Below, one piece after another: positions 116,901 through 122,900 of a DNA stretch of 248,000 nucleotides. The notes beneath the pieces are model-generated. The model did not search any database. It saw only the letters and a list, made by a program, of their open reading frames with translations, and was not told the origin of the DNA. Position 1 is the stretch's first letter. The number at the start of each line of letters is the position of its first letter. Origin of the DNA: Octopus vulgaris. Its lineage: Eukaryota. The stretch covers positions 102,196,001 to 102,444,000 of the forward strand of contig OX597821.1 in NCBI GenBank assembly GCA_951406725.2. Reading direction: 5' to 3'. The position numbers and the translations under genes were made by a program.

Positions 116901-119900
116901 ATGCATATACACACACACACACACATATATATATAAAAGGTAAGGGGAAGGGTAAAGACCACCTTTGGTCATGAAAGGTTGTTTATGGAAGACCAGCAAT
117001 CGCCAATGCATACCAGCCTCCCCTCTCAATGCCACTGATGTTATCCAAGGGAAAGGCAAAGTTTGACACAGCTTGGCATCAGGGATGCTGCAACTCATTT
117101 CTACTGCTTAGTGAACTGGAACAATGTGAAATAAAGTGTCTTGCTCAAGAACACTACACACAGACTGGTCTGGGAATCGAACTCACAACATCATGGTTGT
117201 AAGCCCAATGCTCTAACCACTGAGCCGTGCCATTCACATATGTGCATATGTACATGTAGGTATGATTGCGCATTTGTGTTTGTGTGTGCAGACCCTGTTC
117301 CATCTCCTGTCAGTATTTGTGAGTAAGTGTATGATATAACGTTTGTGAATTTGTGTGTGTGTGTGTGTGTGAATATAGTATTATAGGTGTGTGTATGTGT
117401 GTGCATATTGTGTGTGTGTGTGTGAACATGCAATGTGTGCATGTTTTTGCAATATAATTTGTCTCTGCACACGCAGACAATGGCTATAGTTATTCTATGT
117501 GTTTGCAAGTATATGAACGTAATTTGTATGTGTATGTCTGTGTGTGTACAATGTGTGTGTATGTTGTATGCATGTGTGTTGTGTATGTTATGTGTGTATA
117601 TTTTTCATATGTGCCTATATGTTGCATGTGTGTGTAAGTGTTTGTGTGTGTGTGTGTGTGTGTGAGTAGCATGTGTAAGTGTGTTGTGTATATGTACTTC
117701 TGTGCAGTATATATGTATACATATGTGTGTGTACCTTGTGTATGCAAATTCATCTATATTTGCATGTGTGTGTGTATGTGTGATGTGTATGTATTGCACA
117801 TGTCTTTGATGTGTATGTGTGTGTGTTGTGCATGGGTGTGTGTGTGTATATATATATATGTGTGTGTGTAAGTGTGCATGAATTTATGCATCTTTTTGCC
117901 CCATAACTTTCATTTTGTTTCATTGTCAGGACAAGTCAAGTTGCATTGCACCACTGTCTGTGGCACCTTTGATTCAAGAGGATGATGAAGTGATGCATGT
118001 CAACATAGGTTCAGCCCTAGCTACAGCTCATATGGCCAGTCTGCTCTGCTCCATCAAATGTCGTATTTGGGGCCTGGTGGACCCAAACCATCTTAAATCT
118101 GCTCAGAAAAATCTAGAATTTCTGGACATCAAAAGTATCCATTTGAAAAAAAAAATCTCTTTATGTTGATTACTAAAAACAAACAAACCAAACTAATGAA
118201 AAATATTAATCATTGAATACTAATTGCATTTAATGTTTTTGTTTAAATTTTAATTACCAAAAATGTTTTCAGTTTTCACTAATTACTTTGTAAGTTATTA
118301 ATAATTATGAGACATTTTAAAATATATAATATCTTGGATTGCTAATTTTCCATTCAGATCACACTCTTGGCATGTATGTTGATGGAGCTCTTTCAATTAA
118401 TGTTGAATCGATTCTAACACACCCAACAATTAGGGTTTTGTCTTGCACTCTCCTAATGACTTACCCCCACATCCTACAATGCCTATTCTTATGCAGATGA
118501 CACTATTCTTCATTCCTTCCTGACATTCCCCAAACATTCTTCAGCCACTCACAGTTTTGCCACCACACCTCTATCCTTCACAGATTCCATGAACAAAGAC
118601 CTATAAATAATCCACCAATGGAGATATGCAATATATAATATATATGTGTGTGTGTGTGTGTCTGTGTGTGTGTGTGTGTGTGTATATACTTATATCACGT
118701 GATCACGTGATTGACCAGACCATCAGATGTTTTACACATCACTGGTCACAATGCGTTCGCATTGTTTTAGCCTTCGAATGATGCCACCCCGCTGGCTAAG
118801 CGAGCAGGCCAACAGAAGAGTGAGAGAAAGAGTGGTGAAAGAGTACAGCAGGGATCGCCATCACCCCCTGCCGGAGCATCGTGGAGCTTTAGGTGTTTTC
118901 GCTCAATAAACACTCACAACGCCCGGTCTGGGAATCGAAACCGCGATCCTACGACCGCGAGTCCACTGCCCTAACCACTAGGCCATTGCGCCTTCACATA
119001 TACTTATATATATTCTGAAACCTTAACCTTTCTACAGATGTAAAACTCTTGACAGAATCATTCTTAGATTTGTCTCCAGATGATCAGAAGTTTAAAGCTG
119101 TTAGAATAATCTTGTTGACAGCCAAGTGTAGTAAGTCTGCTTTAAACAGCCCAGTTGATTTTGTGATTAATGAAGGAGAAGGTGAGTTTATTATTATTAT
119201 TATTATTATTATCATTTATTATCATCATTATTATTATTGTTGTTGTTGTTGTTGGTGGTGGTGGTGTTGTTGTTGGTCTTGTTGTTATTGTCGTTGTCAT
119301 CGTCGTCATCATCGCCGTCGTCATCGTTGTCATCGTCATCATCATCATCATTACTATAGCAGAGTCATTAGCACACAGGATGAAATGTTTTGCGGTATTT
119401 CACCCGTTGTTAATTTCTGAGTTCAAATTCCGTTGAGGTCAACTTTGCCTTTCATCCTTACATGGTTGATAAAATAAGTACCCGTTGAACACTGGGGTCG
119501 ATGTAATCGACTCATCTCCTTCTCCAAAACTGCTGCCCTTGTGGTAAAATTTGAAATCATTATTATTATTATTATTATTATTATTATTATTATTATTATT
119601 ATTACTGGACTGGCATAATCAGTACAATGTTAGACAGTGTGTACAAAATGTGAAAAGGCAGAAGAAAATTAAGACATTTTGTTCAACACTTTAAACAATT
119701 GCTGTATTTCTTCCAGGTCTTTATATTCTGTGTTCAAACCCCATTGCATTTAACTCTGCTTTATATTTCAGTGGGCTCGAAAAAATGAAGTACAAATACT
119801 GCATTTGGTGACGTCTTATTCTCACCCACTTCAGGCTAGTAGTATTTCTTCTTTCTCTTCTTCAGATATCAGTGTCCTGAAAACCTTATCACGTGGTGGT

Positions 119901-122900
119901 GTCAGCAGGGAACAGCTGGAAGGTCTGTGTAAAGAGGAAATGGAATACCTCAAGCATTCGCTTCTCTGTGAGTAGACACGACAATGTTTCTGATCTTGCA
120001 TGATAATCATCAGCCATCATAGAGTCAAAAAAAAAGAACACATATAACACATGCGTGTGCATGCACACACACACACACACACAATAAACCAAGTATTTCA
120101 TGTTGCTTTGATCCACTCAGCTGACAGTAAATGTAGAGCTGCCTTCTTAAGTTATGCTGATTTACAAGGGCCGGCTTCCTGGTTCCCATGGGATATATAT
120201 CCCCACCTGGACGGGATGCCGGTCTGTCACAGTGTTACTCATTTTTGCTATCTGAGTGGACTGGAGCAACATGAAATGAAGTGTTTTGCACAAGGACACA
120301 ATGTGTTGCCCGGTCCAGGAACTGAAACCACAATCTTACGATCATGAGTCCAATACTCTAACCACTAAGCCATGCAACTCCATTGACAGTTGGTTTCAAT
120401 GATAGCTAGTTAGTTAACAACCCTACAGATGATTCTTTTATGACTTCATTGCTTTCAGGCTTAGCTTAAGGTGTTTTCGCGCCTGACATCACAAAATGCG
120501 TCTGAATAAACATTGCCGGACAGCAAATAGAGACTTGAACTTTGCTGAGAAAATAATTTTCATTTTTAACCTCCTATATAGTACGCACTAGGGATTTTGA
120601 CCTTTAAATTTTGGGAAAAAAATGCGGATTATACTCGGGGATTTACGGTATATATATCTATATATATATATACACATGCCCACATACATACACACCATAT
120701 ATTCCTAATGAAAATTCTTGTATATTTCAGTCCCTAACGTGAAAGGTGTGGTCTACTTGACCAGATCTATCCATGACCTAGAAAATGAAGTGGCTGTATC
120801 AAAGACTGTGGAATACGTCAACTCATTTGTCCACTCCAGTCATTCCCTTTACAAAGTGGTTCCTCCTGTTTTACCATTCAACAGAGATGACATTCAAAAT
120901 AAGATTGGCCTTCAAGATAAATACATCAAGTTCAAACCATCAGCTACCATGAATGGTTGCTTCTTAGCAATCATTGCTCGAGGGGTGAGTGGATATAGTT
121001 TATAATTTATTTGTTTGTTTGTCATGATGCTCTTAAGAATTCATTAGACATGGTTTTGTGTGTGCGTGCGTGTGTGTTTGCTTGTGCTTGTGTGCTCATT
121101 TGCCTTCAGATTTCATCCTGTGCTATCTAGTAATAGTATTATATGTACTTCCAGTATTATATGTACTATCCATTGGACATTACAAATATGATTTGCAATA
121201 TCCATGGATTTTTAAGGGAATCATTAATACATGAGTTTGTTTCTTGAGACAAAAATTGTATTAGCGTTTTGGTTGTATCAAATGTTTAGTTAAGGGATAT
121301 TTACCAATTTGTAGTATTCAGAAGGTTCTGTGAGGTATATGAGCAATTCCTGTGAATATTTTGACTTATCATACACTCTCTTTACTCTTTTACTTGTTTC
121401 AGTCATTTGACTGTGGCCATGCTAGAGCACCACCTTTATAGTTGAGCATATTGACCTCAGAGCTTATTCTTTGTAAGCCTAGTACTTATTCTATCGGTCT
121501 CTTTTGCCGAATTGCTAAGTTACGGGGGACGTAAACACACCAGCATCGGTTGTCGAGTGATGTCAGGGAGACAAACACAAGCACACAAACACACACACAC
121601 ACACATACACACACATACATATATACGATGGGCTTCTTTCCGTTTCTGTCTACCAAATCCACTCACAAGGCTTTGGTTGGCCCGAGGCTATAGTAGAGAA
121701 TACTTGCCCAAGGTGCCACGCAGTGGGACTGAACCCGGGACCATGTGGTTGGTAAGTAAGCTACTTACCACTCAGCCACTCCAGTGCCTACAGATAGATA
121801 TATAGAAATAATACGGGAGGGATGCTAGAGGTGGCATGTTACTTTGCATTTAGATTTGTACTAGGATGGGTGTGTGTGGATAGGAAGAAGAAACAAGAAA
121901 AAAGAAAGAAAGAATATGAGAGAAGGGAAAGATGTTAATGAATTTCTTTGCTTTTATTTTAGTGTATATACCCTGTGAGGGGGGAACACTGAACATCTGA
122001 TTTAACCTCAAACTCAGCAGGGTGCTACATTAATGATTTCACAAGCTATAAGGAGAAGGGAGCCAGTTTTTGTTCAGATGCAGAAAACCTGAACTGATAA
122101 TATCTCAACAAAAATTTACTTCTTATATGTTACAACTTTCATTTCTTCAGAGAAGACTCTTGTGTAAGTGCCTTGTGTAAGTTTCATGTTGGCCCAAGTC
122201 TTGTAAATAAAACTGAGCAGACAGAAACTGAACCAGGTGGGGCATTATGTCCTTGAGCAAGACACTCGCTTTATTTGACCTTGCTCCAGTCTACTTAGCT
122301 GACTGTGACTACCAGCTCTTTCTCTCTCCAGCCACTATGTCCATGATTTTTATTTCTTTACTGCCAACAAGGAGCTACACACAGAGGGGACAAACAAGGA
122401 CAGACAAACGAATTAAGTTGATTACATTGACCCCAGTGCCTAACTGGTACTTATTTAATCGACCCTGAAAGGATGAAAGACAAAGTCAACCTCAGGGGAA
122501 TTTGAACTCGGAACATAGCGACAGACGAAATACCACTAAGCATTTTGCCCGGCATGCTAACGATTCTGCCAGCTCACTGCCTTAATTAACCATGTCCATG
122601 ATTTTGGTTGGGTGAAGAAGTAGGAGGGTCAGGCAGTTATATCTTCTGTCTTTTACTTGTTTCAGTCATTAGACTGTGGCTATACTGGGGAACCACCTTG
122701 AAGAATTTTAGTGGAAAAAATTGACCCCAGTACTTATTTCTTTTAAGCCTAGTACTTTTTCTATCAGTCTCTTTTGCTAAACCACTAAGTTACAGAAATT
122801 TAAATTCACCAACACCAGTAGTTAAGTGATGGCGGGGGCAAAATACAGATACACAGACATACACATACACACGTATTTGTATGATGGGCTTCCTTCAGTT

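What the first reader, a model, noticed from the sequence alone, without database searches (positions are those of the whole stretch)
119038..120984. NSUN7 orthologue has lost the catalytic cysteine: probable pseudo-methyltransferase
Seen: motif VI reads [14 protein letters not shown] (codon AGA near 120763) where NSUN/NOP2 enzymes have YSTCS; motif IV reads ILLTAKCS instead of DAPCS. Established: the motif VI Cys is the nucleophile of RNA m5C methyltransferases and the motif IV Asp binds SAM. As I recall, human NSUN7 lacks the Asp but keeps CTCS. Inference: this intact 10-exon gene encodes a doubly inactivated RNA-binding or scaffold protein.
Basis: partly seen in the sequence, partly recalled or inferred. 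Interest (0 to 1): 0.7.

Follow-up and report, generated by a model that had tools for sequence, protein, structure and literature searches.

The report
Octopus NSUN7, a dead RNA methyltransferase
The octopus copy of NSUN7 is an intact, conserved gene whose protein has lost the key catalytic cysteine and the cofactor-binding residues, but this holds for every non-vertebrate NSUN7 I sampled, and mammalian NSUN7 was shown in 2025 to be inactive, so the octopus gene is a typical case.

Summary
A 10-exon, 775-codon gene on the + strand (92664-124143) encodes an NSUN7 orthologue. Motif VI reads [14 protein letters not shown], with Arg548 (AGA, 120763-120765) where NSUN enzymes have the nucleophilic Cys. 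Motif IV reads ILLTAKCS in place of DAPCS. Motif I reads IGSALAT in place of AAPGxKT.

The gene is not decaying:
- All splice sites are GT-AG.
- dN/dS against O. bimaculoides is 0.18 overall and 0.12 in the NSUN domain.
- AlphaFold2 predicts an NSUN5-like fold with high confidence.
- No alternative exon with TCS exists in the window, and I found no second NSUN7 copy in the genome.
- A-to-I editing of AGA cannot give Cys.

The "pseudo-methyltransferase" reading is supported, but two points reduce its interest:
1. Mouse and human NSUN7 are already shown to be inactive because they cannot bind SAM (Li et al. 2025).
2. The Cys loss is not special to octopus. TRS occurs in cephalopods, gastropods, bivalves, an annelid, nemerteans, Ciona and a chytrid-like clade. 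THS, TNS or TYS occur in a brachiopod, arthropods, a hemichordate, a starfish and a rotifer. With one exception, only vertebrates carry TCS.

The side result of most interest is that parsimony mildly favours Arg as the ancestral NSUN7 state. If so, the vertebrate Cys would be a reversion.

The parts
92664..92974 (+). NSUN7 exon 1 (ATG; Asn-rich, predicted disordered N-terminus)
   Evidence: tblastn of O. bimaculoides NSUN7; in-frame stop upstream of the ATG, GT donor; pLDDT below 50
100009..100334 (+). exon 2 (end of the disordered region, start of the helical N-terminal domain)
   Evidence: The acceptor was chosen from two nearby AGs, so the 5' boundary is uncertain by a few codons
103383..103441 (+). 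exon 3 ([20 protein letters not shown])
   Evidence: tblastn; AG/GT junctions and a phase that closes the frame
107544..107824 (+). exon 4 (NusB-like N-terminal domain; ARHRIK...YIWVNQLKT)
   Evidence: Foldseek aligns this part with the N-terminal domain of RsmB/Fmu
112161..112341 (+). exon 5 (ferredoxin-like subdomain, Pfam PF21148)
   Evidence: Pfam hit at 8.2e-14; the whole-genome PF21148 search hits this exon and otherwise only the NSUN5 locus
117930..118134 (+). exon 6, with the degenerate motif I ([19 protein letters not shown] at 117990-118046) in place of the SAM-binding DxCAAPGxKT
   Evidence: alignment to NSUN5 2b9e; the octopus NSUN6-like gene keeps LDMCAAPGGKT
119038..119181 (+). 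exon 7, with motif [10 protein letters not shown] (119109-119132): Asp replaced by Thr, Pro replaced by Lys, Cys485 (TGT 119127-119129) retained
119866..119967 (+). exon 8 (linker helix between motifs IV and VI)
120731..120984 (+). exon 9, with motif [16 protein letters not shown] (120748-120789) and the last strands of the methyltransferase fold (NGCFLAII)
   Evidence: the only match in the 248-kb window to motif VI exons of Cys-bearing homologues
120763..120765 (+). AGA codon, Arg548, at the position of the catalytic nucleophile Cys
   Evidence: same codon in O. bimaculoides and Mytilus, CGG in Babylonia, CGC in Owenia
123679..124143 (+). exon 10: disordered C-terminal tail ending in the conserved motif [13 protein letters not shown] (124102-124140), then the TGA stop
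   Evidence: the motif recurs at the C-terminus in molluscs, a nemertean and Saccoglossus

Best explanation
This is the single-copy octopus orthologue of NSUN7. It keeps the RsmB/NSUN architecture (NusB-like N-terminal domain, ferredoxin-like subdomain, Rossmann-type methyltransferase domain), but its active site can no longer work. Motif I and the motif IV Asp, which hold SAM, are replaced, and the motif VI nucleophile Cys is Arg. It therefore cannot make m5C. I infer that it acts as its mouse orthologue has been shown to act: as a non-catalytic RNA-binding or regulatory protein used when cells build flagella and cilia, spermatids above all. The dead catalytic domain would then serve as an RNA- or protein-binding module. 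Shown here: gene structure, the residue replacements, fold retention, purifying selection, single copy, and the taxonomic spread of the Cys loss. Inferred: lack of SAM binding, RNA binding and the flagellar role in octopus.
For: The gene is intact, with 10 exons, 775 codons and GT-AG junctions. The residue replacements are placed by alignment to human NSUN5 and by a family-wide hmmalign. Pfam's methyltransferase model PF01189 no longer detects the protein, and only PF21148 does. dN/dS against O. bimaculoides is 0.18 overall, 0.12 in the NSUN domain and 0.08 in the N-terminal domain, with dS 0.155. AlphaFold2 gives pLDDT above 90 over about residues 145-620. The best PDB match is human NSUN5 (TM 0.84 normalised to the target), and RsmB/Fmu aligns over about 514 columns. 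In the careful tree the octopus protein sits inside molluscs (96/98), within an animal NSUN7 clade that is separated from NSUN5 at 100/100. Canonical NSUN genes with intact motifs exist elsewhere in the same genome, and there is no second NSUN7 copy. Literature: mouse and human NSUN7 do not bind SAM, and knockout leaves m5C unchanged but breaks sperm flagellum assembly (PMC12804707). Mouse NSUN7 crosslinks to spermatid mRNAs (PMC12001970). Pearl-oyster nsun7 falls in the male-gonad spermiogenesis expression cluster (PMC4082630). Planarian nsun-7 marks ciliated mechanosensory neurons (PMC12132226). C. elegans has no NSUN7 (PMC7957426); from general knowledge, its sperm lack flagella.
Against: No biochemical, expression or RNA-binding data exist for the octopus protein, so function is transferred from mouse across more than 500 million years. 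The motif IV Cys, the Thr and Ser of motif VI, the QD motif and the EN motif stay strongly conserved, so the former pocket still does something unknown. The tools gave no atomic coordinates, so I could not see where the Arg side chain points. SAM binding was judged from motifs only.
Confidence: 0.8

Rival explanations
1. The protein is still an m5C (or other) methyltransferase that uses the retained motif IV Cys485 as its nucleophile, as DNA m5C methyltransferases and DNMT2 do. The motif VI Cys would then be dispensable.
For: The motif IV Cys-Ser is retained in nearly all NSUN7-like sequences, and other pocket residues (Q, D, T, S, EN) are conserved. The fold is intact.
Against: The SAM-binding residues are gone as well. 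Motif I AAPGxKT is IGSALAT, and the motif IV Asp, needed for SAM binding in NSUN6 and lacking in inactive mammalian NSUN7, is Thr (PMC12804707). Mouse NSUN7 keeps both Cys residues yet neither binds SAM nor affects m5C. Several orthologues have also lost the motif IV Cys (starfish PQDS, goby PKSS, firefly PPNS), so that Cys is not universally needed.
Confidence: 0.06
2. The Arg codon is an assembly or sequencing error, or a real Cys is supplied by RNA editing, an alternative exon or a second gene copy.
For: Octopus recodes many transcripts by A-to-I editing (general knowledge).
Against: O. bimaculoides has the same AGA in an independent assembly. TRS is found in Argonauta, a further cephalopod-like sequence, eight bivalve and four gastropod sequences. 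Editing of AGA gives only GGA, AGG or GGG (Gly or Arg), never TGY. No other exon in 248 kb matches motif VI, and no [YF]xTCS..EN motif occurs in any frame. PF21148 finds only this gene and NSUN5 in the 2.8-Gb genome.
Confidence: 0.01
3. The gene is a decaying pseudogene or a functionless relic, and the open frame is only incidental.
For: The catalytic motifs are degenerate, and the N- and C-terminal thirds are low-complexity and evolve faster (dN/dS 0.19 and 0.33).
Against: A 775-codon frame stays open across 10 exons with canonical splice sites. dN/dS is 0.12 and 0.08 in the folded domains. Orthologues are conserved from chytrid-like sequences to vertebrates, with 1454 representative clusters at E up to 1e-10. 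The predicted fold is confident.
Confidence: 0.02

Closest known systems
[quoted passage not shown]
   Same: It is the orthologous gene (tree). The domain order is the same, with a disordered tail. Both have a degenerate motif I of the xGSGxTxAH type and a motif IV without the SAM-binding Asp that still keeps Cys-Ser (LLTPRCS/LLLPRCS against LLTAKCS). There are hints of male-germline or ciliated-cell expression in lophotrochozoans.
   Different: Vertebrate NSUN7 keeps the motif VI Cys (TCS), while octopus has Arg (TRS). Octopus has Ala-Lys where vertebrates have Pro-Arg/Gln before the motif IV Cys. Pfam PF01189 still detects fish NSUN7 but not the mollusc proteins. The octopus protein ends in a C-terminal [13 protein letters not shown] motif that was not seen at the C-terminus of the vertebrate sequences. 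No experimental data exist for the octopus protein.
NSUN5 (28S rRNA m5C methyltransferase; human structure 2b9e)
   Same: It is the closest solved structure and the closest active paralogue: E 4e-18 by sequence, TM 0.84 by fold. Both have the ferredoxin-like subdomain PF21148.
   Different: NSUN5 has intact motif I (CAAPGNKT), motif IV (DPSCS) and motif VI (STCS). It forms the outgroup clade at 100/100 support. The octopus genome has its own NSUN5 locus on another contig.
Bacterial RsmB/Fmu (E. coli 16S rRNA m5C967 methyltransferase, 1sqg)
   Same: Full-length architecture, including the helical NusB-like N-terminal RNA-binding domain, aligned over about 514 columns.
   Different: It is an active enzyme with all the catalytic motifs, shares only 16% identity, and lacks the disordered extensions.

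Membership tests
NSUN7 orthologue group | Groups with vertebrate NSUN7 to the exclusion of NSUN5 and other NSUN paralogues in a phylogeny | tested here: met
   IQ-TREE with LG+C20: the NSUN5 outgroup splits off at 100/100. The animal NSUN7 clade has 97/86 support, molluscs 96/98 and tunicates plus vertebrates 98/97, in an order compatible with the species tree. NCBI names the mollusc, annelid-clade, nemertean, brachiopod, starfish and hemichordate relatives 'putative methyltransferase NSUN7'.
NSUN7 orthologue group | Motif IV lacks the SAM-binding Asp (DAPCS becomes xxxCS), as described for vertebrate NSUN7 | tested here: met
   ILLTAKCS, with Thr at the Asp position; compare LPRCS in mouse (PMC12804707).
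NSUN7 orthologue group | Single orthologous locus or conserved synteny | tested here: inconclusive
   Only one NSUN7-type PF21148 hit in the 2.8-Gb genome, and the same exon structure in O. bimaculoides. Synteny with vertebrates was not examined.
Active RNA m5C methyltransferases (RsmB/NOP2/NSUN, Pfam PF01189) | Motif VI Thr-Cys nucleophile | tested here: not met
   Arg548 (AGA 120763-120765) aligns with the Cys of NSUN5 'STCS'.
Active RNA m5C methyltransferases (RsmB/NOP2/NSUN, Pfam PF01189) | Motif IV Asp-(Ala/Pro)-Pro-Cys: Asp for SAM and cytosine, Cys for product release | tested here: not met
   The sequence is T-A-K-C-S. The Asp and Pro are absent and the Cys is present.
Active RNA m5C methyltransferases (RsmB/NOP2/NSUN, Pfam PF01189) | Motif I DxCAAPGxKT SAM-binding loop | tested here: not met
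   [12 protein letters not shown] (117990-118046). The octopus NSUN6-like gene has LDMCAAPGGKT.
Active RNA m5C methyltransferases (RsmB/NOP2/NSUN, Pfam PF01189) | Sequence passes the Pfam PF01189 gathering threshold | tested here: not met
   At E up to 1, hmmscan returned only PF21148. The whole-genome PF01189 search did not pick up this locus.
Active RNA m5C methyltransferases (RsmB/NOP2/NSUN, Pfam PF01189) | Class I Rossmann methyltransferase fold of the NSUN type | tested here: met
   AlphaFold2 pLDDT above 90 across the domain. Foldseek top hits are NSUN5, RsmB, NOP2, NSUN6 and Trm4.
Active RNA m5C methyltransferases (RsmB/NOP2/NSUN, Pfam PF01189) | Binds SAM and methylates RNA | not testable with these tools
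   This needs ITC or methyl-transfer assays. The answer is known to be negative for mouse and human NSUN7 (PMC12804707).

The most novel reading that the evidence does not exclude
NSUN7 was already a dead enzyme with Arg at the nucleophile position before bilaterians diverged, and perhaps in the common ancestor of animals and flagellated fungi. On this reading the motif VI Cys of vertebrate NSUN7, the residue that led to its classification as a methyltransferase, is a secondary CGY-to-TGY reversion and not a relic of catalysis. The recurrent Arg would then be a selected feature of an ancient cilium- or flagellum-associated RNA-binding pseudoenzyme. Support: Cys occurs only inside the vertebrate clade, apart from one long-branch sequence. 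The observed codons form a single-step chain TGC-CGC-CAC/CAT-AAC. Sankoff parsimony prefers Arg over Cys at the root of the NSUN7-like clade by 2 steps. Teleosts changed Cys to Arg again independently. Weak points: deep nodes are poorly resolved, no named cnidarian, sponge or amphioxus sequence was sampled, and the orthology of the chytrid-like clade is unproven.
Probability: 0.45. Interest if true: 0.6.

Novelty: new member of a known kind. Interest (0 to 1): 0.35.

Why it matters
On its own, the octopus gene is one more member of a family now known to be non-catalytic. The comparative picture it led to is more useful. Every non-vertebrate NSUN7 I sampled, with one exception, has lost the nucleophile, yet the fold and many pocket residues stay under purifying selection. 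This is independent evolutionary evidence that the conserved job of NSUN7 never needed methyl transfer, and it agrees with the 2025 mouse results. It warns against annotating invertebrate NSUN7 genes as "m5C writers"; honey-bee and other epitranscriptome surveys still do so. It also points to a testable idea: the dead pocket, often with Arg at its centre, may be an RNA-recognition device tied to flagellum and cilium biogenesis.

Tried and rejected
- **Paralogue search by protein:** The genome search 'own' with a protein query failed twice for technical reasons. I used the Pfam families PF01189 and PF21148 instead.
- **Naming more taxa, first attempt:** The search for homologous proteins with the 71-sequence alignment returned only molluscs, because of its word prefilter. 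It gave no cnidarian or amphioxus names.
- **Naming more taxa, second attempt:** the last search, with six unnamed deep-branching sequences, named only one of them (P0071, Strigamia). P0033, P0070, P0074, P0100 and P0103/P0104 remain without an organism.
- **DNA for more orthologues:** The look-up of encoding contigs had no record for Mytilus isoform X2, Osmerus or Tubulanus. The Arg codon of the teleost CTRS clade could therefore not be read.
- **tRNA-derived repeats:** ARAGORN found no tRNA in the gene region, so the tRNA-like look of the intronic repeat was not confirmed.
- **Alternative exon, editing, assembly error, pseudogene:** all considered and rejected.
- **Position of the Arg side chain:** the structure tools return no coordinates, so I could not examine where Arg548 points in the model.
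- **Literature:** searches for NSUN7 with 'pseudoenzyme', 'invertebrate', 'phylogenetic' and 'metazoa' found no paper that describes the Cys loss outside vertebrates. The library is incomplete, so this does not prove that none exists.
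Full report
**What is in the window.** The region lies in an octopus genome. The assembly is 2.8 Gb, and the window is contig C8:102196001-102444000. Using the O. bimaculoides protein 'putative methyltransferase NSUN7' (P0001) as a guide for tblastn, I built a full model of 10 coding exons on the + strand:
- exon 1: 92664-92974
- exon 2: 100009-100334
- exon 3: 103383-103441
- exon 4: 107544-107824
- exon 5: 112161-112341
- exon 6: 117930-118134
- exon 7: 119038-119181
- exon 8: 119866-119967
- exon 9: 120731-120984
- exon 10: 123679-124143

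All junctions are GT-AG, and the joined frame is 775 codons without a stop. The protein is 94% identical to the O. bimaculoides protein over the aligned residues.

**The observation.** Motif VI reads [14 protein letters not shown] (120748-120789), and the Arg codon is AGA at 120763-120765. Motif IV reads ILLTAKCS (119109-119132), with Cys485 retained. A HMMER alignment to human NSUN5 (PDB 2b9e), the best hit among solved structures, fixes the correspondence:
- NSUN5 'LVYSTCS' lies over 'VVYLTRS'.
- 'ILLDPSCSGSG' lies over '[11 protein letters not shown]'.
- The SAM loop 'DACAAPGNKTSH' lies over '[12 protein letters not shown]'.

Pfam's methyltransferase model PF01189 no longer detects the protein. 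Only the ferredoxin-like subdomain PF21148 does.

**Is it real, and is the gene alive?**
- The same AGA is present in the independent O. bimaculoides assembly. TRS is also present in Argonauta and in a third cephalopod-like sequence assembled from public reads.
- A-to-I editing of AGA yields only GGA, AGG or GGG, which follows from the genetic code. Editing therefore cannot restore Cys.
- No other stretch of the 248-kb window matches the motif VI exon of Cys-bearing homologues, and no [YF]xTCS..EN motif exists in any frame.
- In the whole genome, PF21148 hits only this gene's exon 5 and the NSUN5 locus. There is no hidden second NSUN7 copy.
- Canonical NSUN genes are present elsewhere. One example is an intronless NSUN6-like frame with LDMCAAPGGKT, LLDAPCS and YSTCT.
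- I recovered the orthologous O. bimaculoides coding sequence exon by exon. Nei-Gojobori dN/dS is 0.18 overall at dS 0.155. It is 0.08 in the N-terminal domain, 0.12 in the NSUN domain, and 0.19 and 0.33 in the disordered N-terminal region and C-terminal tail. That is purifying selection, so this is not a pseudogene.

**Fold.** I ran AlphaFold2 on the O. bimaculoides orthologue with a 71-sequence family alignment. It gave pLDDT above 90 over about residues 145-620. The N-terminal 131 residues and most of the C-terminal tail are disordered. Foldseek against the PDB ranks human NSUN5 first (TM 0.84 normalised to the target). PH0851 and E. coli RsmB/Fmu follow, aligned over about 514 columns, which includes the NusB-like N-terminal domain. 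NOP2, NSUN6, Trm4 and NSUN4 come next. The scaffold of an RNA m5C methyltransferase is fully kept.

**How special is octopus?** I searched a profile of four mollusc NSUN7 proteins and one fish NSUN7 against 1.84 billion cluster representatives. It found 1454 clusters at E up to 1e-10. I aligned the best 150 to the profile and read the three motifs. I then obtained organism names for 31 representatives. The results by group:
- **TRS:** cephalopods, gastropods (Babylonia in two copies, Bradybaena, an Elysia-like sequence, Lymnaea), bivalves (three Mytilus species, Potamilus, Dreissena, Mactra, Sinanodonta), the annelid Owenia, the nemerteans Tubulanus and Lineus, Ciona, and a clade that contains the chytrid Rhizophlyctis.
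- **THS:** Lingula, Saccoglossus, the centipede Strigamia and a firefly.
- **TNS:** the starfish Patiria, which has also lost the motif IV Cys.
- **TYS:** a rotifer.
- **TCS:** lamprey, coelacanth, Polypterus, a frog, a turtle and most teleosts.
- **Secondary changes inside teleosts:** one clade (Osmerus, Polymixia; 9 clusters) has CTRS, and gobies have TYS.

Of 56 non-vertebrate rows in the NSUN7-like clade, only one carries Cys, and it sits on a long branch (P0113). All NSUN7-like sequences, vertebrate or not, lack the canonical motif I and the motif IV Asp. The octopus state is therefore the normal non-vertebrate state.

**Phylogeny and direction of change.** I built a careful IQ-TREE (LG+C20) on 49 sequences with the motif VI columns removed.
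- NSUN5 (DPSCS, STCS) is separated from everything else at 100/100.
- The chytrid-like TRS clade branches next.
- Within animal NSUN7, support is 96/98 for molluscs with octopus nested in cephalopods, 98/97 for tunicates plus vertebrates, and 95/91 for vertebrates.

This branching order fits orthology. The codons at the site are AGA (both octopuses, Mytilus), CGG (Babylonia), CGC (Owenia), CAC (Lingula), CAT (Saccoglossus), AAC (Patiria) and TGC (lamprey). They form a chain of single-nucleotide steps, TGY-CGY-CAY-AAY, with Arg as the hub. Sankoff parsimony on the rooted tree prefers Arg to Cys at the root of the NSUN7-like clade by 2 steps, under both unit costs and nucleotide-step costs. The animal node taken alone is ambiguous. 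This mildly favours an early Cys-to-Arg change and a later reversion in the vertebrate stem over six or more independent losses. However, deep nodes are weakly resolved, and I could name no cnidarian, sponge or amphioxus sequence.

**What is known.** Li et al. (Nat Commun 2025, PMC12804707) showed four things. Nsun7 knockout does not change m5C in any RNA class in mouse testis. The mouse and human NSUN domains do not bind SAM. Motif IV is LPRCS in place of DAPCS. Knockout disrupts the axoneme and the longitudinal columns of the sperm tail. They compared vertebrates only and stated that all orthologues keep motifs IV and VI.

Other papers add context:
- Guseva et al. (RNA 2025, PMC12001970) found by CLIP that mouse NSUN7 binds spermatid mRNAs.
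- A follow-up paper notes that mice carrying a presumably catalytically dead variant are fertile (PMC12785897).
- Pearl-oyster nsun7 lies in the male-gonad spermiogenesis expression cluster (PMC4082630).
- Planarian nsun-7 is expressed in ciliated mechanosensory neurons (PMC12132226).
- C. elegans lacks NSUN7 (PMC7957426).

I found no paper that describes the loss of the motif VI Cys outside vertebrates. The paper library is not complete.

**Verdict.** Most likely the octopus protein is a non-catalytic RNA-binding or regulatory protein of the NSUN7 type, used in flagellum or cilium biogenesis. That function is inferred from mouse data and from lophotrochozoan expression hints, not shown for octopus. 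It is a new member of a known kind. The pseudoenzyme status is already established for the family, and the Cys-to-Arg change is shared by all sampled molluscs and most other invertebrates.

The part worth following up is comparative. The nucleophile is absent throughout non-vertebrate NSUN7, Arg recurs at that position, and the vertebrate Cys may be secondary.

Noticed in passing
window 124102-124140 (last 13 codons of exon 10): The protein ends in [14 protein letters not shown] motif of the form E-H/Y-x-K/R-I/V-V-x-H-P-x-P-F-R lies at the extreme C-terminus, after an otherwise unconserved disordered tail, in cephalopods, gastropods, bivalves, a nemertean (Lineus) and the hemichordate Saccoglossus. 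It looks like a short docking motif. I did not see it at the C-terminus of the vertebrate sequences.
   Followed up: partly
protein clusters P0046, P0051, P0059, P0060, P0065, P0072, P0076, P0082, P0091 (teleosts incl. Osmerus, Polymixia): A well-supported teleost NSUN7 clade (100/100) has independently changed the motif VI Cys to Arg (CTRS) inside the Cys-bearing vertebrates. Gobies have TYS and have also lost the motif IV Cys (PKSS). The Cys is therefore dispensable in vertebrates too.
   Followed up: partly
protein clusters P0109, P0118, P0120, P0122, P0124, P0128, P0130, P0131, P0134, P0137 (one named: chytrid Rhizophlyctis rosea): A separate clade of NSUN5/7-like proteins has motif IV EPPNS (no Asp, no Cys) and motif VI TRS. 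It branches between NSUN5 and animal NSUN7. If these come from flagellated fungi and their relatives, the dead enzyme may be older than animals and may track flagella.
   Followed up: partly
G000:C21:23408391-23408900 (locus L002, 769-2181): An intronless 470-codon open frame encodes an NSUN6-like protein with fully canonical motifs (LDMCAAPGGKT, LLDAPCS, YSTCT), while the other NSUN genes of this genome are split into many exons. It may be a retrocopy that stayed functional or that replaced the parent gene.
   Followed up: no
window 118816-118993, 109040-109218, 109807-109988 (-) and about 7 further places in the window: A repeat of about 180 bp occurs in the introns of the gene, with 10 copies in the window at a median 85% identity. 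Part of it looks like a tRNA-derived SINE, but ARAGORN calls no tRNA there.
   Followed up: partly
window 131587-132853, - strand: Two adjacent open frames (154 and 230 codons) downstream of the gene resemble a reverse-transcriptase fragment of a non-LTR retrotransposon, with an ...FADDAAL... motif. No family search was run on them.
   Followed up: no
window 92664-92974 and 100009-100120 (exons 1-2): The N-terminal 130 residues or so are Asn- and Thr-rich low-complexity sequence. They differ by several in-frame indels between the two octopus species and are predicted to be disordered. Argonauta's annotated protein lacks this part altogether.
   Followed up: no
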